A stretch of 64,000 nt of DNA from Vitrella brassicaformis CCMP3155 (taxonomy: Eukaryota; Protista; Chromerida). The translations under genes were made by a program, and so were the position numbers. Below, piece after piece: positions 42,859-58,953 of this stretch. Every line of letters starts with the position of its first letter. Position 1 is the stretch's first letter. The stretch is taken from NCBI GenBank assembly GCA_001179505.1, contig CDMY01000243.1, positions 124,001 to 188,000 of the forward strand, in the 5' to 3' direction. The notes beneath the pieces were generated by a model. The model saw nothing but the letters and a program-made list of their open reading frames with translations. It ran no database searches and was not told the origin of the DNA.

Positions 42859-43302
42859 GTGCCTGGCGGCGGGTGATGGGGTGGGGCTGGTTGGGGTGCG
42901 TATGTGTGTGTGTGTGAAGGGAGGGGGGCCGTGTGTCAACGCGCAAGGGCAACAGGACTTACTGTACTGTAATGGGTGGAGCGGCTCATTCAGCACGTAA
43001 GTCAGTCGGAAGGAAGAGACAGGGAGGGAGTCTACACCGGTCGGTGACACACACACACACACACGTGCAGCCACCCACACCAACGCATTGATCTGATCCA
43101 GGAATGCACAAACAAATAGAGACAGACATGGATGGGATAGGCTGGGATGGACACACACAGACACATACAGGGGAAAAAGGGTCCGTCCCGCACACACACA
43201 CTCTCTCTCTCACACACACACACACACCCCACCAGGCGGCTCCCGCCTTTCCTCTATCTGTCCACCCCCTCAACCGCTAGACACCAATCATCTCAATCTC
43301 AA

Positions 43303-46300
43303 TCATCTCTGGTACCCTCCCACACCACCACCACCACCACCGCCCCCCCTTTGCCACGGCGGCTGCTGACTCCACGGCGGGGGCGCCTTCCCCCTCTCAT
43401 CATGACCCCTACGCCCACCCTGGCCGCCCTGCATGAAGCCATACTGAACCCCAGAGGGATGGCCATATGGCGACGGCCCCCTTTCTGGCGCATACGGCTG
43501 TGTCGGCGGGGAGGCGTACGACCGCTGCTGATCCAGATGGTCGCCACCCCCTCCCCGATCGCTCGACCTTCTCCAGCCCCTCTCGCGCGACGAACGACCA
43601 ATATCCCTTGGGTAGCCTCCGAATGGCGACGGCCGTCGCTCCCACCGTGCTGCATCGGCCGGGGTGTAGATGTCCTCCGAGGGAGGTGGTGCCTGCCGAG
43701 CCCCGAACGAGAGATTGACTGCGAATGGGTCGACAGCCGGACTGGGGTAGGGAGCCGGGGACACGCGACGGGCAGCTCCACCACCTTGGTCGTAGGACGG
43801 TTGTGGTCCCATGCCGCCGAGGCCAGGGATAAGCGCCTGTGGCGCGGGGCTGGTGTATGGTGCGGCTGCGGCAGCAGCTGAAGGGAAATGCTGTGGCTGA
43901 GGGCTGGGAACAGACGGGGCACCCGCAGCAGTCGCAGTGTCCCCCGGCTGCAGGGGCAGGGACTTGGCCAGGGCCAGCAGGATGTCGAGAGGGTTGCTAC
44001 TGGACGAGTCCTCCTGCTCGCTCGGTGGCGGTGGTTGCGGCACCTGACCACCAGCGACACTCGACACTGCTGGTGGTGGGGGCGGGGGTGCTGGTGCTGG
44101 GGGTGCTGCAGGCGACGGTGACTTCCTCCTGGCCCGCTCCTCAAACATTGGCGGAGTCGGGATCTTCACACCTCCTCCAGGATGGTATACATCGTCCTCT
44201 ACCCGCCGCCTATCAGCCTCCACACCATTGACCGCCGACACGTCCATCATGACAGGGTCCTGGTCCACCAGACCATGGTCAAACTGGCGAGGGGCGCTCG
44301 ACGCGGCCGCGGCGGGCGGGGGCGGCGAAGGCGATGGCACGGGCGACCGGGGCGTCTCGTGTGGGAGGAAGGTGGTCTTGGGTTGCTCTGGCTCCCACAC
44401 CTTGCCCGAGAAGGAATCCACCCACCGAAACTGGCTGTCGGGCAGATCCAGCACGAAGGTCTGGGCGGCCTGATCCTGGGATGAGGAGCTCGCCTTGCGC
44501 CGGAGGTCGTCGTTGATGCCGCGGACGTGCCTTGCGAAACGGGTCCGGGTGAAGGCGGGGTAGGGGCGGCCCAAGCACCGCTCGCCGTCACGCCTGACCC
44601 CATGGATGGATGGATGGATGTGTGTGGGGGTGGGTGCTGCGGGTGGGATGGTGCTTACGTGAGAGCGGTTGGTATCTCTAGGACGCCGGTGACGGCGTGT
44701 CTGTTGAATGGCATGGAGGTGGGGAGATAGCGCTTGAGCCCTGACACGGGGGGAATGACCCACAGCTTCAGCTTGTGGCCCTTGCAGTCGCCCACAAAAG
44801 CAGCCACCTACATACGCACCCAACACACGCACACATACACACGTGGTGCGTCCCTCCCTCCCTCCCTCCCTCCCTCCATGTGTGTGTGTGTGTATGTCCA
44901 CCCACCCCACCTTGACTGTGTCGGTGAGGGCCTTGCTCTGCAGGTGTTGGAACTCCTGCGTGTTGAGGTGCTGCGGCGCCACCGTGCTCTTGACGTCAAC
45001 ATGTGGCGGCCGCAGCCAGTCCAAAAAGTCTTTGTGCTCCAGGCTCATCCACGGCCCCCCAACCGCCACCGCCACCAGGTCCCTCGCCTTGCTCTTGCAC
45101 CACCCGTCGCTCCGCCCCGGATGGATGAAATCCGCAAAGCGAGCAATCCCCATGGCACCGTCAAAAGTCAGCTTGCCCGCGCCCTCCAGCGCTGCCCGCA
45201 GCTCCGGCGGCCCCTCCTCGACAAGCGACACAATGCTCGCGGGGAATACGAGTGGCGGCCCCGCCCTCCCCCTGATATCCCTCTCCAGTGTGCCTCGCCA
45301 GACGATGGCCTCCGCGCCAGAACCCTCCTCACCCGCCGCACTCCCAATCGGGGTGCCGGGCGGCGAGAAGTTGGCGCGAGGGCTCTCAGGGCCAGCCAGG
45401 ATCTGACCCAAAAAGTCATCGCCGGGGCGGTCGACCTCCCCAATGCTGAAGTCGGGTGGCCCCTGGCCGCTTCCCTCAAACAGATCCAGAGGGTGCGATG
45501 GGATCCCCCGGCCGCCCGAGACGGCATCAAGGGCGGAGAGGAAGCTGCCCGATGCTTGTGGCTGGGCGAAGGTGTGAGCGAAGGGGCCGAATGAGAAGGA
45601 GGGGGGCGGTGCGAGCGGGGCGGCTGCCGCTGCGGCCGACTGCGATGCTTGTGCGAGGAGGCGCTCGACCTCACTCAGGCCCTTCTCGTGCAGATCTATC
45701 AGCTTCTCCTCGTAGGCTGACATGAATGACATCACACACAGCACAGCACAGCACAGCACAGGGGACGGTGGGTGAGAAGCCGTGTCGGGCCTTCCTTATC
45801 CTTACCTTTCATGTACTGCTTGGAGACCTTCCCGCCGGCCTCCTGGTAGAGCTCCTCCTCCAGCTGGCCGAGAGTCTTCTCGATGGCCACCATCTTGGCC
45901 GCCCCGATGAACAGCGACTGCGGCTGCATCTGCACAATAATCGCACGACGGATCGACTGCTCCACGCCCACACGCAGCGGGCCCTTGCTGTCGGGGCCCT
46001 CCTCTGTCGACGGCTGCTTCTTGAGGTCGAAGCGGATCTTGAGCAGCTTGCTGATGAGGTCCTCGCCGTCGGTGCTGCTCGGGGCCGCTGTGGCCGCCTC
46101 GTCGAGGTCTGCTGCGTCGATCTTCTGCGCGCGGAGGATCTCGCTGACGTCTTCCTGGATGCAGTTCCTGCCCGCTGGCGTCACGCGCTGCTTGACCTTC
46201 CCTGTTTTGGCGTCATAGACCACCACACCCTGCTCACACACGCAACACAAGACAACACACCAAGACAGGCAGGCAGCCACTTCCTTCCAGGGCCCGTTCG

Positions 46301-49300
46301 TTCCAGTTCGTGGAGGGAGGGGAGGGGACCTTGAGCAGTCTTCCGGTGGCACCAGCGGCGCTCCATGCGGATTTCTCGACGGAGAGGTTCTGCAGCTCCA
46401 CGTCTATGCGGACGTTGTGCTTCTTCTCGTGGATGCCCCGAAGCACCTCCATCTCGCGCGACACATTGACCAGGAAGCTGGCCATCGTGAGCCGACGCTT
46501 GCACCACCCGTCGATGCTCGTCTTGGCCTCGGAGAGGAAGATCTTGGCGGCCTGCAGCAGCTGCACGAGAAAGATGCTCTCGTTCCATGTGGACGGCACG
46601 CCGAAGCTGGTGGACAGGTCGTGGAGTTGCTGGAGGGTCTGCAGGCGGGGGCTGAGGGTGTCCATCACGGTCGCGTCGATCTTGTTGGCCGGCGTCCTGT
46701 CCACCATGTCCAAGCGGCGCTCTGACACCAAACACACCACACCACACCACACCACACAGTTGACAGACAGACAACACACAATGGGTGGAGGCGCCATGGA
46801 CTCACCCCACACACAGTCGTCATTGTGCATCACCTACCTGGTGTCATGAGGGACCGGATTGCCTGCCGCCAGGCCAGCCGCATGAAGGACCGACAGGTCT
46901 CCTCCAGACGGGCAGATATCGTCAAAGGACACCTCTGAGCGAACAACAAAGACAGACAGACAGACGGACGAACAGACAGGCAGACAGGCATCCACGTTTG
47001 TCTGTGACGTGTGTGGTCGCCCCGCCCCGGCCCGCTGACATACCACAATCCTGTTATAGAGGTCGAGCAGCGCCTGCAGGTCCTCCCGGCTGAGGCCCTC
47101 GCCATCGCCCCTGCTCAGCACCGATGTCTGTGACTCGATGAGGTCGTGCAGCTCGTCGTGCTGCTTGAGGTGTGTCCGCAGGCTCTCCTCTGCGGGGATC
47201 GACACGGTGATCTTGCGCAGGAACTTCTCGGTGGCCTCGACGGTCACGCGGGAGCCCTCCTTGCCCTTGGCCCGTTCTGACGCACCCTCCGCTGCCTGAC
47301 GCAGCAGCTTCTGGCCCTCGTCCTCAAGGATCTCAAGCTGCACTCACATGGTTTAGTGTTCGTCTCCCCTTATCACTGCACTGCCCCCCCACCACCCACC
47401 TGTTTGAGCAGGGTTTGTGTCCTGTCGACGAGTGTGTTGCTGACGAAGGTCTCGACCAGGCCCTGCAGCCGCTTCCTGCGCACGTCGAGGGCGCGGAAGC
47501 TCAGCAGCGACACGCCCTTGCGGCTGGCGGCCGACTCACGGTCGTTGAAGGCCGCTATCAGTATGTGCGCCTCGCGAGCCCACGCGTAAATGTCCTCCTG
47601 ACACACACACGCACACACACCCACATGTGGATGGATGGATGGACGCATCCCTCGATCTGTCACTCAACTCACCCGCAGCATCAGCAGGGACTCGCCAGCC
47701 GGGAACATGGCTCGGTGAGGGCTCTTGTGGAGCTTTTTGATGAGCTCCGACATCTGGCAGTGTCCCGCCTTGGTGCTCAAACCCATCAGGTCCGTCGGCA
47801 CCGCCACACGCGCCTGGAGCGACTGCAGGGTCTGCCCTGAGAGCAGCTGGGCCATGGCGGCCGCCTGCTGGATGCGCACCCGCACCTGCTGCACCTCCCA
47901 CGTGTTGAGCTGCGAGAAGCCCACCAGGCTACCGATCGTCCGCGGCCCGGTGTCATGATGCTCTGGCAGCATCATGCCCTCGTCGTCAACGGCGGCAGGC
48001 TTAGCGCGCTCGAACGCCTTGATGGCCTTGATGAAGGGGCTATCCTTGAGCCGCTCGAACTCGCCGGCAGCACCCTCCAGGCTCGATAAAGGCACCCACG
48101 GCTGCCGGTTGTCTGGGTCGGCGAGGGAGACATCCTGGTGCTCGACGCGCCACAGCAGCACCTTCAGAGGCAGCAGCAGGCTCTCCGGCGCCTTCCAGCT
48201 GCCACGCTGCCTCGCCAGGTCTGCCCGACCGATGAGCGAGCGGAGCGCCGTCAGCCGCATGTTGGTTGCCCCTTCCTTTAGGCTGTACCACCGGGGCGAT
48301 GCCTGTGAAGCCAACACCATGAGCAGGCCGCAGCTGACAGCGAGGTAGTCGATGTCGGCCGATGGCGTCTCAAAGCCGACCCGTATGATGAGCGAGGCAA
48401 GGTGGATGGAGAGCAGGCAGACGCCCTCGATGCGGGCCGTCCAGGGGGGCGTGTTGTCCGGGGAGCGGCCGAAGTCGAAGTACTTGAAGAAGCCCTGCTG
48501 CTCGATCTGCTGGAGGAGGGGCTGGCTGGCGATGGCGGTGGCCATGATGTGCTGCAGGACGTCGTTGAAGAAGTCCATTACCGCCTGCATCCACTGCACG
48601 AGCGACTCGCCGTGCAGCTCGAGCGACTCGCCCTGGCAGGCCACCTCCTGTGTGCTGCGGTCGGGGGCTGCTGCTGCTGGTGGGAGGGGAGTGCCGAAGA
48701 CGAGAGGGCGGACCTCACTCCGCCACACGTGGAGCCTCTTGTAGAACTGGAAGATGGAATAGGGGGCACTGCTGCGGCACCTGGTGGCGAACTGGTTGCA
48801 GGCATCGACCTGCCGGCGGATCTCGTTGAGCACCCAACACCACGTCTGACGCCGGCTGGGCTTCCCATCACCGCCAGCCGACCCCCCGGCACCGCCACCC
48901 TTGCCCTTGATCGACACGCCCGTCTGCACCGCCGTTGCCGCCGCACCCTCCCTCTTGACCTCTTGCTTCTCGGCCTTCTGCTGCTTGGGGGGCCGCTTGG
49001 GGACAGCTGGCTTCTCGTCACCCTCCTCCATTTTCACCGTCACCCTGGCCGCCTTGGACGGTGCTGCTGCTGCTGCTGCTGGCTCGGCCTTGACTTTGCC
49101 GTCAGTGGCGGCTTGCTGTGGTTTCTTGATGCGGCCGCCCTGAGTGGTGGGAGTTGGCTTGGGTGTGGTGGGTGAGGGCTCCTTGACGATGTCGGTCATC
49201 TGTGGGAAAGCGGTGTCGAAGTCCTGCATGACCTTGGTCAGCGACACCAGGGACCGACACAAGAGCGCTTCAATGGCACTGAATGAATGATTGACCGATA

Positions 49301-52300
49301 CGATACACACACAGGCAGGCAGGCAGGCAGGCAGGCCAGCCAGGGGGGCAAGGGATCATCCCAAATCAATCAGTCGGTGGTGTGTGGCTGGGCTGGGCTG
49401 GTGTATTGCCTTGCCTTGCCCACCTACCCACCTAGAGAACCATTCGAGGGCCACTAGAAGGCTGCGGTGTAGGCCGCTCTCCTCTGTCCGATGGCACAAG
49501 GGCGGCACCGGCTTCTGCTCCATGTCCGCCTTGAAGGCAGCCACTCTCCTCTGTAGCTCACGCAGCCCTTCCTCCTCCTCCCTCTGCTCGTCTGACGCAC
49601 CAACATCACCCCCGCCACCACCGTCACCACCAGTAGTCACATCCATCGGCTGTGCATCCCTCAATGCGGCCGAAACTAGGCTGGAAAAGCCGTGCAGTGA
49701 CTTGGCAATCAAGGGCTTGACCTCGCCCTCCAGATCAGACGACGCCAGCTGCCGCAGGGGGGACGTAGGTGAGGCCGTCGTCACAAAGAAGATGGGGGAG
49801 GGCTCCGACTGCGACAGGGAGTCTGCCGATGGCCCCTGCTGGCTGGCGACCACCCACTGCATGGCCGCCTGGTCCGACAGCTCCTGCGCACCCGCCTTGA
49901 GCCGGCCCGCCACGCGCGCACCCGCCCCCTCAGGCTTCCACAGCAGGGGCTGCATCGCCACTGCCTCACGGACACTCTGCTGCCAGCTGGTGCAACGGTC
50001 ATACCGACCCCTCAGGTCCTCGTAAAGGGCGGCATCGGGCGAGTCGTTTGCAGGGGGTGCCGGTAGCTCCTCGAGGGCCGTTTTGAGGAGGCTGACGGCG
50101 TCGACCTTGTCGCTCGGCTGCTCTGTTTCCATGTCGAGGATGCCCTTGAGCGACTGTGCGCGGAGGCCCCAGCTGCGGCGCTTGAGGACCTTCTGCACGT
50201 AGTGCTCCATCGAGCCGGAGGGGATGAGCTTCTGGATGGCGTCGGTGAGCTTGGGGATGAGGTCCTCGAGCACCTCCAGACATTCGCCGTCGGTCAGATG
50301 GCTCAGTAGGTCGCCCTCGGCTTCTGCGGCAGTGCCCGCCGCTGTTGCCATGGTGGTGTCCTGGTAGGAGGCGTCCCACTGCGGAATGCGCGGCCACAGG
50401 GTGTGCAGGAACACAAACCTGCATCCACACACACACATACATACACAGACAGACAGACAGACAGAGCCATCCTTCCCTGTGCCCATCTTCGTTCGTGTGT
50501 TGGTTGAGGTGCCCCCGCCCACCCACCATCCCACCGACCTCATGAGAATGCGTGTGATGAAGGCCTCCTCGTCCGCCCTCTGCAGCATGAAGAACGGCGG
50601 GGTGATGTCGAAGCTGTGCAGCTGCCCCGACTGCAGCAGGCTGTCCGGCAAATGCGGCAGCAGCAGCCGCACCAGCTCCTGCGGCCCGCGGCAGGCCAGC
50701 AAGAGAATGGACTTGAGGAAGGCCTCGTCGAGTTTGAGGCGGATGCAGCAGTTGCGGACGATGAGCGGGTCGGACTGCATGAGGTAGTGCGTGAGCACCC
50801 TCAGGCACTCGACCACCTGGCCGCGGGGAGTTTCGGCATCGGCCGCTGCGGTGGCTCCGGCGCCGCCTGTGTGCCAGTAAGGCTCGTCGGGGTGGGCCTG
50901 AGGAGGGAAGAGGGAGAGGGGGGCGAGACATTCCATCCATCCGGTCAATCCAGTGTGCGCTAGCGGAGAGTGAATGGGTGGGTGCACTCCTCTTCTCTCT
51001 CTGACCTCTTCTGTAATCATTTCCTGGCCCTCATCCACCTGAAGGCACACAGGGACGGGGTGAAGCGATGCACACACACATATAGACACAGACACAGACA
51101 CAGACTACTCACCTGGAAGTCGACAGCCTGCGCGAGTAGGTCGTCCATTCTCGCCGTGTCTTGGTGGTAGTCGACCACCCTGATCTCCGACACCACCCGT
51201 GACGCCCGCATAAACGGCTGTGGCAGCGCTGCGTGGACGGCCGGCGGCATGGGGGGTGGCTGGTGGCTCGGGTAGAAGTCGCCGCCCGTCTCGCTGCCGT
51301 CGAGCAGGGTGGGGTCGGCCAGGAGGGCCTCGACGGCTGCACGCCACAGCCGGTAGTGGTGCAGACGGGCAGACACTCCCTGCACCAGCGACGCCAGCCT
51401 GCAGGGCAGGAGACGGGCGGGAGACATGCAGCTCTTGTTTCTGTGTCTCTGTGCGTGTGTGTGTGTGTGTGTGTCGGTCGGTCGGCCGGCCGGTGGCTGG
51501 GTAGGAACCTTTCGGTGCCGTATTGGTTGGCCTTCTTGAGGTAGACCTCGATCCTCTCCACGTCAGGCCACCTTCAGACAGACAGACAGACAGACGAGCC
51601 GTAAATTGTCCGTGCACCGATGTGTGTGCGTGTCTCTCGGCCCCGCTTCTCTCTGTGAGTGGGTGTTTACCGACCGGTGTGCGTCGCCGCCCTGGGGGCC
51701 TTTGCTGTCTGTGATAAAGGGTCCTTTGAGGTTGATGACGTTGTGGATGTGCTGCTCGAGGTCCTGCATGTCCTTCATCTTTCGTTCGATCCGTGCCCGC
51801 AGGTTCTCTTGCGGCAGGAAGGGCAGAGACGCGTGAGATCTGATGGATACACAGATATGGTCCACCCATCACACACACACACACAGCGCACACAGTACAC
51901 CACCAGTGAGAGCGATTTGGTAAATAAGTAAATAAACACTCACGCAGTACAGAACGTGCAATCACAGACACAGACACAGACACAGATCAGATAGATCAGG
52001 TTACGAGCCGATCCAGCAGTTTCGGCCTAGCTAAGTACTTTCCGCGGCGGGCGGCTCGATGGCCAGATTCACTTTGTTGGCAGTCGCAGGCAGTCGCATT
52101 CAAAAGCCTTTCCGTCCCTCTCACTATGCACCGCACCGCAGCGCAAGCAGCTCTACTTTGGTTCGAGCAGTCCATCCACCACCACCACCACCACGACCAT
52201 AATTCAGTATTACGAAGTAGTAGTAAACACACCTTTCGAGTTTCTCGATGGCGGCGTCGTCAATGACCGTCTCGGGGTCGTCCAGCTTGCGCAGCTCCCC

Positions 52301-55300
52301 CTCCCACGCCTCACACCGCCGGATCAGGTTCTCCATAGCGATCAGCTGCCGCAAAGGCAGACCGAACGACTTGCCCCTCTTGAGGTGGAGCCGCGCCTCC
52401 TGAAGGGTGGGAGCCGCCTTGGCGGGGTCGCCACTTGGCTTGATACCCCGGAGGGCGAGAGCGCGCCGCTCCTCGACCTCTCTGAAGAGCTTCTCGGTGT
52501 CCTTGATCCACGCGTCGGCGTTCTTGACTTTCTGCCGGATGGCTACGAGGGCCTTGGAGGTGAAGGGGACGTTGGCCAAGTGAGACGCCCAGATGCGGAG
52601 AGCCTGAAGGGACAGAGAGAGGAGAGGGGTCGGTGTGGATGGATGTGAGTGGGTGTGTGTATGTGTGTGCGTGCCTGCAGGTCGCCTGCTGGTATGGACG
52701 CGGTGAAGTTGTTGGCCTGGGCCCTCTTCTGCTGCAGGTAATCCAGGTGCGGCACCGCACCAGCCGGCAGTGTCTTGGCCTCCTGCACACACACACACAC
52801 ACACACACACATGCCTCCCTCCACCAACCCAATCCTGCCCTGCATTCTCCATTTGTCCGTCCGTCCATCCGTCGCACGCACCTCCATGAGCTCTTCGATC
52901 TCGTCGATGGAAGGCTTGGGGGAGCACTTGAGCTGCTCTGCCTTGGCGAAGGCCGCCTCGACACGCTCCATCAGACGACGGACCACTGCCAGATTGGGGT
53001 TCTTGCCCTGAGCCAACTCGATGCTCTGAATGACACACAATAAGCCCACACCACACCGATGCGATCGATGTGTGTCGGTCGGTCGGTTGCGTGTCTGTCT
53101 GTTTCGCTACGTACGTCCTCGGCCTCCTCGTGGATGAGGTAGAGCTGCTCCATAGTGATGGCGCTCCCCTCGCCCTTGGCCAGCTGCGGGTACTTCATCT
53201 CAAACACCTTGGCACGCAGCCGACGGCGCAGCACCACCGCCTCGTTGAGGTGCCGCTGCAGACGCCCCTGCGCTGGAGCCAGCAGCAGCTTCTCGCACTC
53301 GGCGGCGTCTTGCGCCTTCAAAGCGTTGTCCGCTGCAGTGATCCACCTGCATGCACCAGATAGATGAGCGCACACCACACACGAGCCTCGTGTGTGCGCG
53401 GTGGATTGTGGATGGCGTGGGTGTGTGGGTGTCTTGCTTACGCTCTGCATCTCTCCCAGGCCTGGTTGAGCCGCACGACGCACCGCAGCCTGACGGGCAG
53501 CCGCCTCACCCCCGACAGCAGCTCCTCTAGCAGCTTGATGGAGCACAAAGCCTGCACACCCGAACCACCACCACCCTGCTGCAGCTGCTGGGAGGTGTTG
53601 GTCGACCTGATGCCCCCAGAACTCAGCCCAGAAGACGACCGCATCGGCGCGTCGGTCGACGACCGTGTGGCAGGCCTCATTGCCGGCTTGGGGGCCGCTG
53701 GCCTGGGCGGCGGTGCCTTTGAAAGGGACAGGGGCGGCCGGGGGGGCAGGCCGTCCTTCCTCTTCACCCCCATGCCCATGCCCTCGCCCGCCGGCTTCTT
53801 GACGTGAGGCGCGCCGGGCCGCTGCGGGTGGTCCTTGTCGATGGGCTTAATGACCTTCTTGGCCCCCACAGGACCGCCTCCAGGCATCAGCGGCCTGCCC
53901 TTGCCGTCACCACCCACTGGCGGCCGCTTGGCTGCGGTGGTCGATGCCGCTGATGATGCCATAGATGGGGGCTTCTTGAGCGGCGCCGACGTGGCTGCGC
54001 TGGCACTTGCGGGTTTCTGCTTCTTGGCGGATTGGGAGCTGCCCGAGTCGGATGGTGCGGGGGGCCGCTTGGCGCCCCGAGCCGATGAGGGGCCGCCGGC
54101 GTCTGAGCCGCCGTCGGCCGTGGATGGTGACGGTCTCGGGGGCTCAGGTGATGGTGCGGGTGGTGGGGCTGCGAAGATGCTGTCAATGATCTCCTGCGGC
54201 GTCTCGTCGATGCGGAGGATGGTCTCGGTCCTGAATGAATCAAACAAACACCCACACAGACACACAACGGACACATGACATGAGTGTGGGTGCCACTCAT
54301 GTCATCCGTCCATCCCATCCACCCATTCATTAAATTCACTGCTTACCGCATGTTCCACATGGCGGCGAGGAGCAGCACGTCGGGTGTGAACATGGGCTGG
54401 GTGTGGGGGCAGATGACGGTGGCGCCGGTGCCCTGCCCCACCTCCTGCAGCGTGGTCCATGCCGTCTTGAGCACCTCGGTGGGCCCCTCCACCCACTCGC
54501 GATCGAGGTCAGCGAGGAAGCGCCGCTGCCGTGTGCACCGCCGGCACTGGTACACCTCCATGTCCGCCGCACGGTCCTCAGACAAACCCACACAACGACC
54601 GTGCAGCCAATCACTGAGTCAGTGATATATTGGCAGAGGGGGAAACAAAGAGAGAGAGAGAGAGTGTCGCTCTGTGTTCTGGGGNNNNNNNNNNNNNNNN
54701 NNNNNNNNNNNNNNNNNNNNNNNNNNNNNNNNNNNNNNNNNNNNNNNNNNNNNNNNNNNNNNNNNNNNNNNNNNNNNNNNNNNNNNNNNNNNNNNNNNNN
54801 NNNNNNNNNNNNNNNNNNNNNNNNNNNNNNNNNNNNNNNNNNNNNNNNNNNNNNNNNNNNNNNNNNNNNNNNNNNNNNNNNNNNNNNNNNNNNNNNNNNN
54901 NNNNNNNNNNNNNNNNNNNNNNNNNNNNNNNNNNNNNNNNNNNNNNNNNNNNNNNNNNNNNNNNNNNNNNNNNNNNNNNNNNNNGGGAGGGGTATGTATG
55001 TGTGTGTGTCCGTGCGTGCCGACCCGCAGACGTCGCATCCGATCATGAATTTGTCCTCGGAGTAAGGCTGTCGGCAAATGCAGTAGAGGGGCGGGGGGGC
55101 GTGCTTGTCGCACCAGTAAGTGGGCACCGCCCAGTGCAGGTCCCTCAGCGACTTGACCACCTTGCCATCCTCCTTCTCTCTCTTATCTCTCTTATTCCTC
55201 CCGCCCTGCCCTTCCTCCCCGTCGGCCTCGCTCTCGTCTTCGCTGTCGCTGTCCTCCATGAGCGGACTCCTCTTGGCCACCAGCCGCTGCTGCTCCTCGA

Positions 55301-56193
55301 TCTGGTCCAGCTCGGCCTTCTGCTTCAGCTGGCGAATCGCCAGGTTGAACCGCCGCGAGTGCTGCGGGTTGCTCGACTTGGCCGCCGCACGAGCCGCACA
55401 CACCACATGGGCCCGCCGGGCGCAGTCCTCCTCACAGCAGGGGAGGGTGCGGCCGCCAGCCTTGCCGCAGATGTGGCACGACACGCTGCTGCCCGGATCG
55501 GGGCGGGGAGTGAGGGGGCAGACCTGGTCCTGCCGGCTGCCACCAGCCGGGGAAGTGGTGGCTGTGTTGTTGTCCTCCATGTAAACGGGCCCCTGCTGGC
55601 CCGGCTCGGCGATGATGTCTATGTTGGTCATGGAACGGAGATCTTTCACCCAGGCCGTGTCGGGGAAGCAGAGGGCGCACAGCAAATGCACCCACACGCC
55701 GTTGTTGGCCTGCTTCAGCGCCCCCTCGCTGCTGCCGCACAGGTAGCACGGCGGCCGGGGTTTTTGGGCGTCTTGCTGATGGTCGACGTTCGAGACACGG
55801 CAGAAGTCGCAGATAAACGAGTCTGAGGGCGTCTTGCTGGCCACGCCGTAGCACCGTCGATGGACGGTCAGCTTGCAGCGGCGGCAAACCACCATCTGGT
55901 CGCCCTGCAGCCGATAAAACTCAGGCTTCTCGGTCTGCATCAACGAAGCAGAAGCAGCACAGCACATGCAGGGAACACACACGGGGAAGGAGTGAGATGA
56001 CAAAGAAAAGAGATGCATGCCAGCCAGTGGTCAGCGGCGCATCTCTCTCGTCCCCCCCGGATTGTGTTGTGTGTGAGGGTTGGTTGGTTTTGACTGGGGG
56101 GAGATGGCAGTGAGTGCCTGTGCTTACGTTAAAGCACACATCGCAGCGTCGTTCGGGGTCCTCCGGACCCAGTATGGCATCAATGTCCATCAT
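43303..56193 (-). CDS. Very large nuclear protein: PHD plus extended PHD (PZP), H3K4me3-type PHD, PLU-1-like helical repeats, TFIIS-central-like domain, SPOC-like domain and Pro-rich tail; more than 20 exons
   Basis: RRCDVCFN|..VVCRRCKLTVHRRCYGV..FICDFC; PPCYLCG..GALKQANNGVWVHLLCA..CHICGKAGGRTLPCCEEDCARRAHVVCA; LYCICRQPYSEDKFMIGCDVC|GDWLHGRCVG..YQCRRC; repeated LEELL..LP..L...W helices; QLEEELYQEAGGKVSKQYMK|AYEEKL; IVWRGTL..LTFDG..LKLWVIPP. In-frame exon chain followed by hand. Confidence 0.75.
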
Positions 56194-56552
56194 CTCTATG
56201 ACGTGCCTAGGCAGGCACTGCCAGGCAACCAGCCTCAATCAGGCAGGGCTGTGGTAAGGTAAGCACGCAGCCACACAGCACGCTACGCCACCCACTCTCC
56301 TCACTCCTCCTTCCTGCTACTGCTCCTTCTTCCTCTTCGGCACCACGTCGTCTTGTCCAACTCCCGCCACGCTGTGCCACTTCACTTGGAGCTGTCAAGG
56401 CTCAGCCAGCATCCTCGTGTCGACGTCTCTTCAACCTACGCATGCATCTTGCCCCTGCGGCTCCTTTTCATCGCGCGAGAGTCTGCGAGCTTAGCCGACA
56501 AAGCTCGCCTCCGGGAACCGCCCGCCAAGCTGCTGAGGAAAGTGATTTAGCG

Positions 56553-58953
56553 ATGGCATTGCGTGCCTGTTCGTCTGCCGTCGCGCGCGGCTCGTTGCAA
56601 CTGCCGCAGTCGTTTCCCGTGTTGTCGGCTCTCCTGGCTCCCGCCGCCCGACGGATCGGTGCACGAGCCTTCTGTGAGCCACAAGACAGACACAAGACAG
56701 ACATCACGCACGCCTCAACCACACGCACATGGCCGGCTCATACATCTTGCCCTCCCTTCGTGTGCTGTGCTGTGCTGTGTTGTGATTGTGTTTGGGTGGG
56801 GTGAATGGTGTGAGTCAGGTTCGCTGCATAGCCAGGCGGCCATCAACGGCGAGGTGGTGGGTGACGGCGGCGCCACGCTTGAAGTCAACCCTCCCCCCTC
56901 TCAGCGCGCCACCCCCTTGACCCCCGAGAAGCGCCCCGCCTTCATGGACTACCAGAGCACCACGCCCATCGACCCCAGGGTGGTGGACGCCATGATGCCA
57001 CTCTACACCCAGATGTATGGGAACCCCCACAGCCGCAGCCACGTGTTTGGCTGGGAGGCGGAGGACCTCGTCGAGAAGGCCAGAGAGGTGCCCATACAAC
57101 GTGTCGGTCTGGCCATGTCCGTCTGCTTGTATTGCACCGCTCTGTATGTGTGTGTGTGTGTGTGTGTGTGGTTTGGTTGGGTGCAGCAAGTGGCTGATTT
57201 GATAGGCGCCAAGTCCAAGGAGATTTTGTTTACGAGCGGGGCCACCGAGAGCAACAACTTGGCCATCAAAGGCGTGGCCGCCTACTACGGCAACAAGAAG
57301 AAACACATCATCACCACACAAATCGTACCTGACCAGACAAAGAGAGAAACGAGAAGCTGGCAATGTCAGCAAACCGATCTGCTGTGGTGCGTGTGTGTGC
57401 GTGTGTGCGTGCGGCATACGCAGGAGCACAAGTGTGTATTGTCGTCGTGTCGGTCTCTGCAAGAGAAAGGCTGGGACGTCACCTACCTCCCTGTCGACCA
57501 AGACGGTAGGTACTCCACACACACCACACCACACCACATGACACACAGGCAGACATCCGCATGTCATTCATGTGTGTGTCTTGTCGTGTCCTGCGGTGCG
57601 TTGCGTTGCGTTGCGTCGCGTGCAGGTCTGATAAGTTTGTCTGAGTTGGAGGGCGCCATCCGGGACGATACCGCCTTGGTGAGCGTCATGATGGTCAACA
57701 ATGAGATCGGCGTGGTGCAGCCCGTCAAGGGGATCGGCGACCTCTGCCGCAAGAAGAAGATCTTCTTCCACACTGACGCAGCCCAGGCCCACGGTCAGTC
57801 AGCAACCCAGCCCTCCCCCTGCAGACCCCCTATACACACACACGCGTGTGCGTTGCATTATTCGTGAAGCTGAGCCTCTTCCCTTCCCTTTCTGTGTGGC
57901 TGACCTGACATTACCTGACAGGCAAGATCCCGATCGACGTTGACGAGATGAACATCGACTTGATGTCCCTCTCCGCACACAAGATCTACGGACCCAAGGG
58001 AGTCGGTACGCATACCCACACTGCCCACACTACCGACGCCCCCACCGCTCTGACTCACCGATCCCTCCCTCTCTCCGTCTGTGTCTGTGTGTGAATCTAA
58101 TCTGTGTGTCCACCAGGTGCGATCTACGTGCGCAGCAAGCCGCGTGTGCGTCTGGTGCCTGTAATAGACGGCGGCGGGCAGGAGCGGGGCATGCGCAGCG
58201 GCACCCTGCCAGCGCCCATTATAGTGGGCTTCGGCAAGGCCTGTCAGGTGGCCAAGGAGGAGATGGACAACGACAGACGGCACGTCGAGAGGCTCGCCAA
58301 GAGAATGGAGGACGGCATCATCAAGGCACTGCCCGACGTCACTCTCAACGGCTCCAAGGTCCCCGACCGAACGAACATACACACACACAATGGGGCCAGG
58401 CAGACAGAGAGAGATCCGTTTGTGTGTGGGTGTGCTTTGCTGTGCAGCTGCATCGTTACCACGGCAATATGAACCTGTCGTTTGCGTATGTGGAGGGCGA
58501 GTCGCTCCTCATGTCCCTCCGGGGCGTCGCCGTGAGCAGCGGATCCGCCTGCACCTCTGCATCTCTCGAACCGTCTTACGTGCTCAGAGCCATCGGTGAG
58601 TGAGTGCCCTTCCCCCCGCCCTCTCGCGACACACACACAAGTTTTGCTTGTGGGTGTGTGTGTCATGGCATGGGCAGGTGTGGATGAGGAGTTGGCGCAC
58701 ACGTCGATTCGGTTCGGCATCGGTCGGTTCACGACCGACGAGGAGGTGGACGAGTGCGTCAAGGTGGTGGTGCAGGAGGTCCGAAGGCTCAGGGAAATGT
58801 CGCCACTGTGGGAGCTCGCACAGGAGGTCAGTCAGTCAATCGGTGCAGTCAGTAGCAAGACCACCAACCACATGTGGCTGCTGTTTGTTTTGTCGATCGT
58901 CTTTGCCTCAGGAGAAGGAGGGCGGTGAGAAGACGGCGATGGTGTGGACATGA
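56553..58953 (+). CDS. NFS1: Mitochondrial cysteine desulfurase (IscS-type)
   Basis: [52 protein letters not shown] (PLP lysine), [12 protein letters not shown] and SSGSACTS (persulfide Cys). N-terminal transit peptide [13 protein letters not shown]. Confidence 0.96.

What the first reader, a model, noticed from the sequence alone, without database searches (positions are those of the whole stretch)
43303..56193. Giant catalytic-domain-free reader joining PZP, H3K4me3-PHD, PLU-1 repeats, TFIIS-M and SPOC
Seen: one apparently continuous exon chain carries a PZP module, a third PHD with an intact aromatic cage (LYC, QPY, FMI, DWL), well over 1000 aa of PLU-1-like helices, then TFIIS-central-like and SPOC-like segments. 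No JmjC, SET or bromodomain is visible. Known: PZP occurs in BRPF/JADE/AF10, PLU-1 in KDM5, and PHD plus TFIIS-M plus SPOC defines PHF3/DIDO/Bye1, which bind Pol II and its phospho-CTD. Inference: a lineage-specific fusion that could read unmethylated and trimethylated H3K4 and Pol II together, linking chromatin to elongation or co-transcriptional splicing in an intron-dense genome. I know no protein with this full architecture.
Basis: partly seen in the sequence, partly recalled or inferred. Interest (0 to 1): 0.75.

Follow-up and report, generated by a model that had tools for sequence, protein, structure and literature searches.

The report
Giant non-catalytic PHD chromatin reader gene
This is a 23-exon gene of the alga Vitrella brassicaformis for a 3345-residue protein with three histone-reading zinc-finger modules and one KDM5-type helical domain but no enzyme domain; the proposed RNA-polymerase-binding modules (TFIIS-M, SPOC) at its end found no support.

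Summary
The window is Vitrella brassicaformis CCMP3155. The finding matches, base for base, a public gene model (P0001, 3345 aa, 'PHD-type domain-containing protein'). It has 23 exons on the minus strand, 56193..43303, and 22 canonical introns.

The assembly gap lies inside intron 2. Splicing across it rebuilds a canonical PHD motif (CDVCG|DWLHGRC), so frame and continuity are supported by sequence. Public DNA contigs do not bridge the gap, and no RNA evidence was obtained.

Confirmed:
- a PZP module (aa 17-300)
- a third PHD (aa 307-352), E 1e-19 to the KDM7/PHF2/PHF8 PHDs, with the cage positions Y306, Y313, M319 and W328 kept
- one PLU-1 domain (aa 645-945, 40.8 bits)
- no JmjC, SET or bromodomain

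Not confirmed:
- 'PLU-1 repeats' over more than 1000 aa. Only one match was found and there is no internal repeat.
- TFIIS-M and SPOC. There was no Pfam hit at any level, no PDB hit and no homologue in an exhaustive search. Two single-sequence AlphaFold models were unusable (pLDDT 37-39), so the fold is undecided.

Best reading: a non-catalytic H3-tail/H3K4me3 reader and scaffold. The link to Pol II is unsupported. PHD+PLU-1 without JmjC may also occur at a second Vitrella locus and, as a lead only, in other algae. Interest is modest.

The parts
43303..56193 (-). Whole coding region of the gene (public model P0001, 3345 aa). Exons on the minus strand: 56193-56128, 55934-55024, 54613-54347, 54230-53442, 53346-53115, 53025-52882, 52782-52675, 52603-52233, 51839-51675, 51571-51509, 51398-51113, 51038-51006, 50897-50539, 50418-49432, 49278-47673, 47597-47400, 47337-47044, 46934-46838, 46721-46330, 46229-45806, 45716-44911, 44807-44659, 44593-43303 (includes the stop).
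   Evidence: P0001 matches the SPOC-like exon at 100% identity. It maps exactly to 23 exons. Each of the 22 junctions has a single splice-site pair that reproduces P0001: 21 GT-AG and 1 GC-AG.
55800..56145 (-). PHD1 of the PZP (aa 17-67, C4HC3), split by intron 1 (56127-55935).
   Evidence: Pfam PHD_2 at aa 34-67, 41.9 bits. The JADE1 PZP alignment covers aa 9-116, including the CDVC of exon 1.
55101..55748 (-). Zinc knuckle plus extended PHD of the PZP (aa 85-300), with an insertion of about 95 aa (aa 202-296) before the final CxxH.
   Evidence: zf-HC5HC2H_2 at 37.7 bits (cut-off 27) and zf-HC5HC2H at 23.7 bits (below its 29.1 cut-off). The second stretch aligns to JADE1 and NTO1 at aa 159-230.
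54535..55082 (-). Third PHD finger (aa 307-352), H3K4me3-reader type, split by intron 2.
   Evidence: Pfam PHD covers profile positions 1-47 of 47, E 5.9e-12. PDB hits: KDM7 1e-19, PHF2 3e-19, PHF8 1e-18, BPTF 4e-16, PPS 6e-14, DIDO1 2e-13. Y306, Y313, M319 and W328 align to identical residues.
54614..55023 (-). Intron 2 (phase 2, GT..AG). It contains the assembly gap at 54685-54984, so its true length is unknown.
   Evidence: The sequence shows the donor GT at 55023-55022 and the acceptor AG at 54615-54614. Public DNA contigs stop at 54634 and at 55025/55088, so the gap is not bridged.
52286..53542 (-). PLU-1 helical domain (aa 645-945), spread over exons 4-8.
   Evidence: Pfam PLU-1 at 40.8 bits against a cut-off of 28.5, E 2.1e-10, profile positions 84-325 of 338, one stretch. 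The exon-wise hit is at 52286-52615.
46230..52285 (-). About 1500 aa (aa 946-2456) of helix-rich and disordered sequence with no recognisable family.
   Evidence: No Pfam family at E<=10 beyond noise. No PDB match. No internal repeat. No homologue besides self in the region searched, aa 640-1300; aa 1300-2440 had no homologue search of its own.
45634..46010 (-). Helical; identity not established.
   Evidence: No TFIIS_M hit exon-wise, on the full-length protein or on the sub-range. The own-genome PF07500 scan hits five other contigs and not this one. z-scores of -0.4 to 1.4 against Vitrella's own TFIIS_M domains. The model has pLDDT of about 50 or less.
44658..45303 (-). Identity not established.
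   Evidence: No SPOC hit. The own-genome PF07744 scan hits C375 and C490 only. Exhaustive phmmer found only self plus a spurious repeat protein. z-score 1.1 against Vitrella's real SPOC. pLDDT 37-39.
43306..44373 (-). C-terminal tail of about 355 aa, low in complexity and rich in Pro, Gly, Ser and Arg, with RG/RGG-like runs.
   Evidence: Sequence and composition: 59-75% PGSAQEKT per 100 aa from aa 3001.

Best explanation
One nuclear gene of Vitrella brassicaformis encodes a 3345-residue protein with no enzymatic domain that reads chromatin and probably serves as a scaffold.

Shown:
- An N-terminal PZP module of the JADE/BRPF/AF10/NTO1 kind.
- A canonical PHD finger whose sequence and cage positions match the solved H3K4me3 readers KDM7, PHF2, PHF8 and BPTF.
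- One PLU-1 helical domain, otherwise known from KDM5 demethylases.
- About 2400 further residues with no recognisable family.
- A Pro/Gly/Arg-rich tail.

Inferred:
- The PHD docks on H3K4me3 at active promoters.
- The PZP engages a second, probably unmodified, H3 tail.
- The PLU-1 helices act as a rigid spacer.
- The long remainder recruits partner proteins or RNA.

A TFIIS-M/SPOC pair that binds Pol II is not part of the supported picture.
For: Identity and structure of the gene. Continuity across the gap: (the PHD profile is matched end to end only in the spliced form). PZP. H3K4me3-type PHD. PLU-1 above the Pfam cut-off. No catalytic domain. PLU-1 described as a curved helical rigid linker of unknown function: PMC10578193. 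The divergent Aminotran_5 neighbour bounds the 5' end.
Against: No transcript evidence was obtained. The two runs guessed to be RNA gave no splice joints. The only real pieces lie at 52168-52571, and one of them runs unspliced through the exon-8 donor. No orthologue with the same architecture was found, so conservation cannot back the model. Histone binding is inferred from alignment only. Two thirds of the protein has no assigned fold.
Confidence: 0.68

Rival explanations
1. The C-terminal part carries a very divergent TFIIS-like domain and SPOC domain, so the protein is a PHF3/DIDO/Bye1-type Pol II and phospho-CTD binder fused to PZP and PLU-1.
For: The third PHD also matches the PHDs of PPS and DIDO1 at 6e-14 to 2e-13. 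The order PHD ... helical segment ... mixed alpha/beta segment is compatible. By eye the segment has SPOC-like motifs (W-R-G at the start, 'KLWVIPP' near the end); that is a resemblance from memory, not a test. No canonical TLD-SPOC gene was seen elsewhere in the genome: the one clear SPOC (C375) follows an RRM, and the TFIIS_M loci examined showed no SPOC nearby.
Against: No TFIIS_M or SPOC hit was found exon-wise, on the full-length protein, or on sub-ranges at E<=10. The six-frame family scans of the genome do not even list this locus as a candidate. No PDB SPOC or TFIIS hit at E<=10. No homologue among 1.84 billion representatives. No similarity to Vitrella's own SPOC and TFIIS_M domains beyond shuffles. 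Even a SPOC fold need not bind phospho-CTD: SPOCD1 and TASOR lack the basic patch (PMC10111866).
Confidence: 0.1
2. The 3345-aa model merges more than one transcription unit, or the main product is shorter. For example, a PZP-PHD-PLU-1 protein of about 1000 aa would end at the in-frame stop near 52127 if intron 8 is not spliced.
For: Intron 8 (393 nt) is by far the longest fully sequenced intron and sits right after the PLU-1 domain. Read-through of its donor reaches a stop after about 35 codons. A contig of run X1, guessed to be RNA, runs colinear with the genome from exon 8 65 nt into intron 8. No RNA joint supports any junction.
Against: X1 is only guessed to be RNA and may be DNA. Exons 9-13 are short, phase-compatible and look coding. 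All 22 junctions have canonical sites and keep one open frame to 43303. The public annotation calls one gene.
Confidence: 0.15
3. The gene is a degenerate KDM5 (JARID1) descendant that lost its JmjN, ARID and JmjC core and kept PLU-1 plus PHD fingers: a pseudo-demethylase.
For: PLU-1 is otherwise a KDM5 hallmark (PMC10578193). KDM5 also pairs an H3K4me0-reading PHD with an H3K4me3-reading PHD. A KDM5-like protein (P0011: JmjC+PLU-1+PHD) is among the few long hits.
Against: No remnant of JmjN, ARID, JmjC or C5HC2 was found. The PHD is closest to KDM7/PHF2/PHF8 and BPTF; KDM5B scores only 1e-5. The domain order differs from KDM5: here the PHD comes before PLU-1 and a PZP sits at the N-terminus. 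Pairwise similarity of the PLU-1 region to P0011 is weak (E 0.098).
Confidence: 0.07

Closest known systems
PZP-containing readers (JADE1/3, BRPF1, AF10, PHF14, yeast NTO1)
   Same: The N-terminal PHD, zinc knuckle and extended PHD carry all zinc ligands. Sequence similarity to solved PZPs is E 5e-12 to 3e-8.
   Different: These proteins are subunits of HAT complexes or partners of DOT1L, and none has a PLU-1 domain. Here the extended PHD carries an insertion of about 95 aa, and the protein is about three times larger or more.
PHD fingers of KDM7A, PHF2, PHF8, BPTF and DIDO1/PPS (H3K4me3 readers)
   Same: About 58% identity (31 of 53 aligned residues) to the KDM7 PHD in the alignment. The zinc ligands and the Y, Y, M and W cage positions are identical.
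   Different: In KDM7, PHF2 and PHF8 the PHD is followed directly by JmjC. Here no JmjC exists on the contig.
KDM5/JARID1 demethylases (the PLU-1 domain)
   Same: The PLU-1 helical domain scores above the Pfam cut-off, and the protein combines it with several PHD fingers.
   Different: JmjN, ARID, JmjC and the C5HC2 finger are all absent, so no demethylase activity is expected.
PHF3 / DIDO / Bye1 / PPS (PHD-TLD-SPOC)
   Same: An H3K4me3-type PHD similar to those of DIDO1 and PPS. The protein is large and rich in disorder.
   Different: The two defining Pol II-binding domains, TLD and SPOC, were tested and not detected.

Membership tests
PZP module (PHD-Zn knuckle-PHD) | N-terminal C4HC3 PHD finger | tested here: met
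   C17, C20, C39, C42, H47, C50, C64 and C67 are present in P0001. PHD_2 scores 41.9 bits against a cut-off of 28.
PZP module (PHD-Zn knuckle-PHD) | C2HC knuckle followed by an extended, atypical PHD | tested here: met
   zf-HC5HC2H_2 scores 37.7 bits against a cut-off of 27. zf-HC5HC2H scores 23.7 bits, below its 29.1 cut-off. Ligands C85, C88, H105, C108 and C175, C178 ... H198, C201 ... C297, H300 are present, with an insertion of about 95 aa. The region aligns to JADE1 and NTO1 in two stretches.
PZP module (PHD-Zn knuckle-PHD) | Binds the unmodified histone H3 tail | not testable with these tools
   Needs peptide binding assays.
H3K4me3-reading PHD finger | Canonical Cx2C...Cx2Cx4Hx2C...Cx2C zinc ligands | tested here: met
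   The Pfam PHD profile is matched over positions 1-47 of 47, E 5.9e-12. The motif is rebuilt across intron 2.
H3K4me3-reading PHD finger | Aromatic/Met cage residues at the positions used by solved readers | tested here: met
   Y306, Y313, M319 and W328 align with identical residues in KDM7 (3kv5), PHF2 (3kqi) and PHF8 (1wep). That these positions form the cage is established knowledge of those structures, not something tested here.
PLU-1 domain | Match to PF08429 above the gathering score | tested here: met
   40.8 bits against 28.5, aa 645-945, on the spliced protein. The best single-exon matches are below the cut-off: 21.3 bits and 21.8 bits.
   There is one stretch only. Nothing was found in aa 950-2460 at E<=10. 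No internal repeat.
KDM5/JARID1 demethylase | JmjN, ARID, JmjC and C5HC2 catalytic cassette | tested here: not met
   None is present in P0001. There is no JmjC match on contig C243.
TFIIS central domain / TLD | Match to PF07500 | tested here: not met
   No hit exon-wise, on the full-length protein or on the sub-range at E<=10. The genome scan lists five other loci.
TFIIS central domain / TLD | TFIIS domain II helical fold | tested here: inconclusive
   The single-sequence AlphaFold2 model has pLDDT of about 40-55 in this part. It is helical but unusable.
SPOC domain | Match to PF07744 | tested here: not met
   No hit. The genome scan finds only C375 (57.7 bits) and C490 (21.8 bits).
SPOC domain | Distorted seven-stranded beta-barrel with flanking helices (PMC10111866) | tested here: inconclusive
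   Both models have mean pLDDT of 37.4 and 39.1. They were not sent to fold search because the matches would be meaningless.
SPOC domain | Basic patch with the highly conserved arginine (PHF3 R1248) that anchors phospho-serine (PMC10111866) | not testable with these tools
   No reliable alignment to any SPOC could be made. The pairwise z-score is 1.1.
PHF3/DIDO/Bye1 (PHD-TLD-SPOC) | All three domains present, in that order | tested here: not met
   The PHD is present. TLD and SPOC were not detected.

The most novel reading that the evidence does not exclude
The orphan alpha/beta segment at aa 2736-2916 and the helical segment before it are an extremely divergent TLD-SPOC pair. Vitrella's counterpart of PHF3/DIDO/Bye1 would then have been fused to a PZP and a PLU-1 domain, coupling two histone-tail readers to Pol II in one polypeptide.
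Probability: 0.1. Interest if true: 0.65.

Novelty: new variant of a known kind. Interest (0 to 1): 0.3.

Why it matters
Chromerids are the free-living photosynthetic relatives of apicomplexan parasites, whose chromatin readers are poorly understood. This protein combines a PZP, a textbook H3K4me3-type PHD and a JmjC-less PLU-1 domain, which makes it a tractable entry point. The PHD and PZP can be expressed and tested on histone peptides. The JmjC-less PLU-1 family, which has a second locus in Vitrella and possible relatives in green algae and haptophytes, could show what the PLU-1 domain does outside KDM5. The function of that domain is still unknown. The more striking claim of a direct chromatin to Pol II-CTD bridge is not supported at present.

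Tried and rejected
1. RNA evidence. The look-up of sequencing runs gave only two runs guessed to be RNA. Read laying on 50300-56250 showed no splice joints. All listed joints were CA-repeat artefacts in DNA runs. The DNA contigs stop at 54634 and at 55025/55088, so the gap is not bridged.

2. Structure. Two single-sequence AlphaFold2 jobs, on aa 2440-2930 and aa 2736-2918, gave pLDDT 37.4 and 39.1. I did not send them to fold search because the matches would be meaningless.

3. Homologues for an alignment.
- Exhaustive phmmer with the SPOC-like exon returned only self and P0002. P0002 is a 6790-aa protein whose score comes from 17 identical matches of one 344-aa repeat unit, so the hit is spurious.
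- Three word-indexed searches (aa 2440-2930, 640-1300, 1-960) returned only self, BPTF-type PHD hits and one KDM5-like protein. They are limited to proteins of 1840-5854 aa.
- No paralogue of the C-terminal segments exists in the genome.

4. The ESM Atlas search on the SPOC-like part gave only unnamed clusters.

5. phmmer against PDB with the PLU-1 region and with the middle region gave noise only.

6. A canonical PHD-TLD-SPOC gene elsewhere in Vitrella was not resolved. C375 carries RRM+SPOC, C244 carries Med26+TFIIS_M, and C1040 carries TFIIS_M followed by a zinc-ribbon-like motif seen by eye (no Pfam hit). C271 carries TFIIS_M alone among the ORFs scanned.

7. Literature search for PLU-1 together with Plasmodium PHD proteins found no papers.

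8. My crude splice-aware dynamic programme recovered one open chain of 16 exons but missed small exons. It was superseded by the exact mapping of P0001.

The joined sequence I used is the public protein P0001, returned. One script concatenated neighbouring exon pairs only to check that they translate to P0001.
Full report
**What and where.** The window is contig C243:124001-188000 of a 72.7-Mb assembly in 1064 contigs. A protein search names the organism as Vitrella brassicaformis CCMP3155. The region is GC-rich at about 63%. All long open frames lie on the minus strand and are interrupted by short stretches rich in CA/GT microsatellites.

An exhaustive phmmer search with one exon returned a public 3345-aa protein, P0001, at 100% identity. 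Its source names are 'unnamed protein product' and 'PHD-type domain-containing protein'. P0001 maps without a single mismatch onto 23 exons, from the ATG at 56193 to the stop at 43303-43305. These are exactly the finding's limits. For each of the 22 junctions there is one splice-site pair that reproduces P0001. Twenty-one are GT-AG and one is GC-AG (intron 7). Introns are 62-153 nt long, with three exceptions: intron 1 (193 nt), intron 8 (393 nt) and intron 2 (410 nt nominal). The 5' end is bounded by a divergently oriented class-V aminotransferase gene.

The joined sequence I used is P0001 as the database returned it. One script joined neighbouring exon pairs only to verify the junctions.

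**The gap, tested first.** The 300 N at 54685-54984 lie inside intron 2. Exon 2 ends at 55024 ('...TGC GG') and is followed by GT at 55023-55022. AG at 54615-54614 precedes exon 3, which starts at 54613 ('T GAT TGG CTG CAC GGT CGT TGT'). The phase-2 junction reads CDVCG|DWLHGRC, which is the canonical PHD core Cx2Cx4Hx2C.

On the spliced protein the Pfam PHD profile is matched end to end (positions 1-47 of 47, aa 307-352, E 5.9e-12). Exon 3 alone matches only the second half of the profile (18.7 bits). Reading through the donor instead gives CDVCGSARTDTH..., which does not fit the motif. So frame and continuity across the gap are supported by sequence logic, and a hidden coding exon is unlikely.

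Direct support failed. Public DNA contigs end at 54634 and at 55025/55088, inside the repeat-rich intron, and none bridges the gap.

**What is confirmed.**

1. PZP.
   - PHD_2 scores 41.9 bits at aa 34-67.
   - zf-HC5HC2H_2 scores 37.7 bits, above its cut-off.
   - zf-HC5HC2H scores 23.7 bits, below its cut-off.
   - All zinc ligands are present.
   - phmmer against PDB finds the solved PZPs of JADE1, NTO1, PHF14, JADE3, AF10 and BRPF1 at E 5e-12 to 3e-8. The alignment starts in exon 1, which also supports intron 1.
   - The extended PHD carries an unusual insertion of about 95 aa.

2. Third PHD.
   - PDB hits are KDM7 1e-19, PHF2 3e-19, PHF8 1e-18, BPTF 4e-16, PPS 6e-14 and DIDO1 2e-13.
   - Y306, Y313, M319 and W328 are identical to the aligned residues of KDM7, PHF2 and PHF8.
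   - That these positions form the trimethyl-lysine cage is established knowledge of those structures. Binding itself is inferred.

3. PLU-1.
   - It scores 40.8 bits against a cut-off of 28.5, E 2.1e-10, at aa 645-945, and spans exons 4-8.

4. No catalytic domain.
   - P0001 has no JmjC, SET or bromodomain.
   - No JmjC match lies anywhere on the contig.

**What is not confirmed.**

*PLU-1 repeats over more than 1000 aa.* There is one PLU-1 stretch only. Nothing is found in aa 950-2460 even at E<=10. Self-BLASTP finds no internal repeat, and there is no PDB similarity.

*TFIIS-M and SPOC.* Every sequence-based test was negative:
- No Pfam hit exon by exon, on the full-length protein or on the isolated segments at E<=10.
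- Six-frame scans of the whole genome with PF07744 and PF07500 find real SPOC and TFIIS_M domains on other contigs, but do not list this locus even as a candidate.
- phmmer against all PDB sequences at E<=10 gives only coiled-coil noise.
- The exhaustive search of 1.84 billion representatives finds only self plus P0002. That score is the sum of 17 identical matches to one 344-aa repeat unit, so the hit is spurious.
- There are no paralogues in the genome.
- Local alignment to Vitrella's own SPOC and TFIIS_M domains is no better than shuffles. The z-score is 1.1 for SPOC and -0.4 to 1.4 for TFIIS_M.

Without homologues, AlphaFold2 ran on single sequences and gave mean pLDDT of 37.4 and 39.1, so the fold question stays open. 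That is a resemblance, not a test. Even a SPOC fold need not bind phospho-CTD, as SPOCD1 and TASOR show (PMC10111866).

**One gene or more.** The single-gene reading rests on the public model and on an unbroken, canonical, phase-consistent exon chain. It does not rest on RNA. The two runs guessed to be RNA gave no joints. The only substantial pieces lie at 52168-52571, and one of them runs colinear with the genome from exon 8 65 nt into intron 8. That could be DNA, pre-mRNA or a retained intron. Read-through there would stop at about 52127 and give a PZP-PHD-PLU-1 protein of about 1000 aa. I rate a split or shorter product at about 15%.

**Mechanism.** Shown: three zinc-finger reader modules, one PLU-1 helical domain and no enzyme domain. 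Inferred: the PHD anchors the protein on H3K4me3 nucleosomes. The PZP binds another, probably unmodified, H3 tail, as the PZPs of JADE and BRPF do. PLU-1, described in KDM5B as a curved helical rigid linker of unknown function (PMC10578193), spaces the reader head from about 2400 residues of helical and disordered sequence. That remainder ends in an RG-rich tail and could recruit partners or RNA.

**Comparison and novelty.** No protein with PZP + PHD + PLU-1 other than P0001 itself appeared in any search. Those searches see only proteins of 1840-5854 aa that share exact words with the query, so absence is weak evidence.

JmjC-less PHD+PLU-1 is probably not unique. A second Vitrella locus on C295 has PLU-1 (30 bits) and, downstream on the same strand, a PHD (34 bits), with no JmjC on that contig. 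The ESM Atlas also lists clusters annotated PHD+PLU-1 in Chlorophyta and Haptophyta (score 0.81, a lead only).

The gene is already in public databases with the same Pfam calls. I class it as a new variant of a known kind, a multi-PHD chromatin reader, of modest interest. The exciting part, a bridge to Pol II, keeps about 10% probability.

Noticed in passing
G000:C295:249500-268999 (L012, L013), minus strand: A second large locus in the same genome has a PLU-1 match (30 bits, above the cut-off; L012:9374-10000) and a PHD finger about 4-7 kb downstream on the same strand (34 bits; in L012:2379-6002). No JmjC match lies on that contig. It may be a second JmjC-less PLU-1+PHD gene.
   Followed up: partly
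window 52168-52372: A 205-nt contig of run X1 (guessed to be RNA) is colinear with the genome across the exon-8 donor at 52233 and runs 65 nt into intron 8. It could be DNA carry-over, pre-mRNA or intron retention. Read-through would end the protein near 52127.
   Followed up: partly
window 56563-57867 (+): The divergently oriented upstream neighbour is a multi-exon class-V aminotransferase gene, cysteine desulfurase-like (Aminotran_5, E 1.5e-38). It lies roughly 0.7 kb from the ATG of the PHD gene, so the two may share a bidirectional promoter region.
   Followed up: partly
window 52604-52674: Intron 7 of the gene uses a GC-AG splice pair. The other 21 introns use GT-AG.
   Followed up: yes
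window, introns throughout 43300-56200; N runs at 1397, 4695, 10520, 23033, 30912, 34658, 54685: Introns are packed with CA/GT and CT microsatellites. Public DNA contigs break at them, and the window holds seven gaps of exactly 300 N, probably for the same reason.
   Followed up: partly
P0002 (public protein, 6790 aa): The only other hit of the exhaustive search is a protein in which the query matched 17 times at an exact 344-aa spacing. Its E-value of 3e-7 is an artefact of summing identical weak matches, which is a caution for repeat proteins in such searches.
   Followed up: yes
G000:C375 (L010), C244 (L007), C1040 (L008), C271 (L009): Vitrella's clear SPOC domain follows an RRM (the RRM-SPOC family). 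Its TFIIS_M domains sit in a Med26+TFIIS_M gene (C244), in a gene where a zinc-ribbon-like motif follows by eye with no Pfam hit (C1040), and alone among the ORFs scanned (C271). No canonical PHD-TLD-SPOC gene was seen in the flanks examined.
   Followed up: partly
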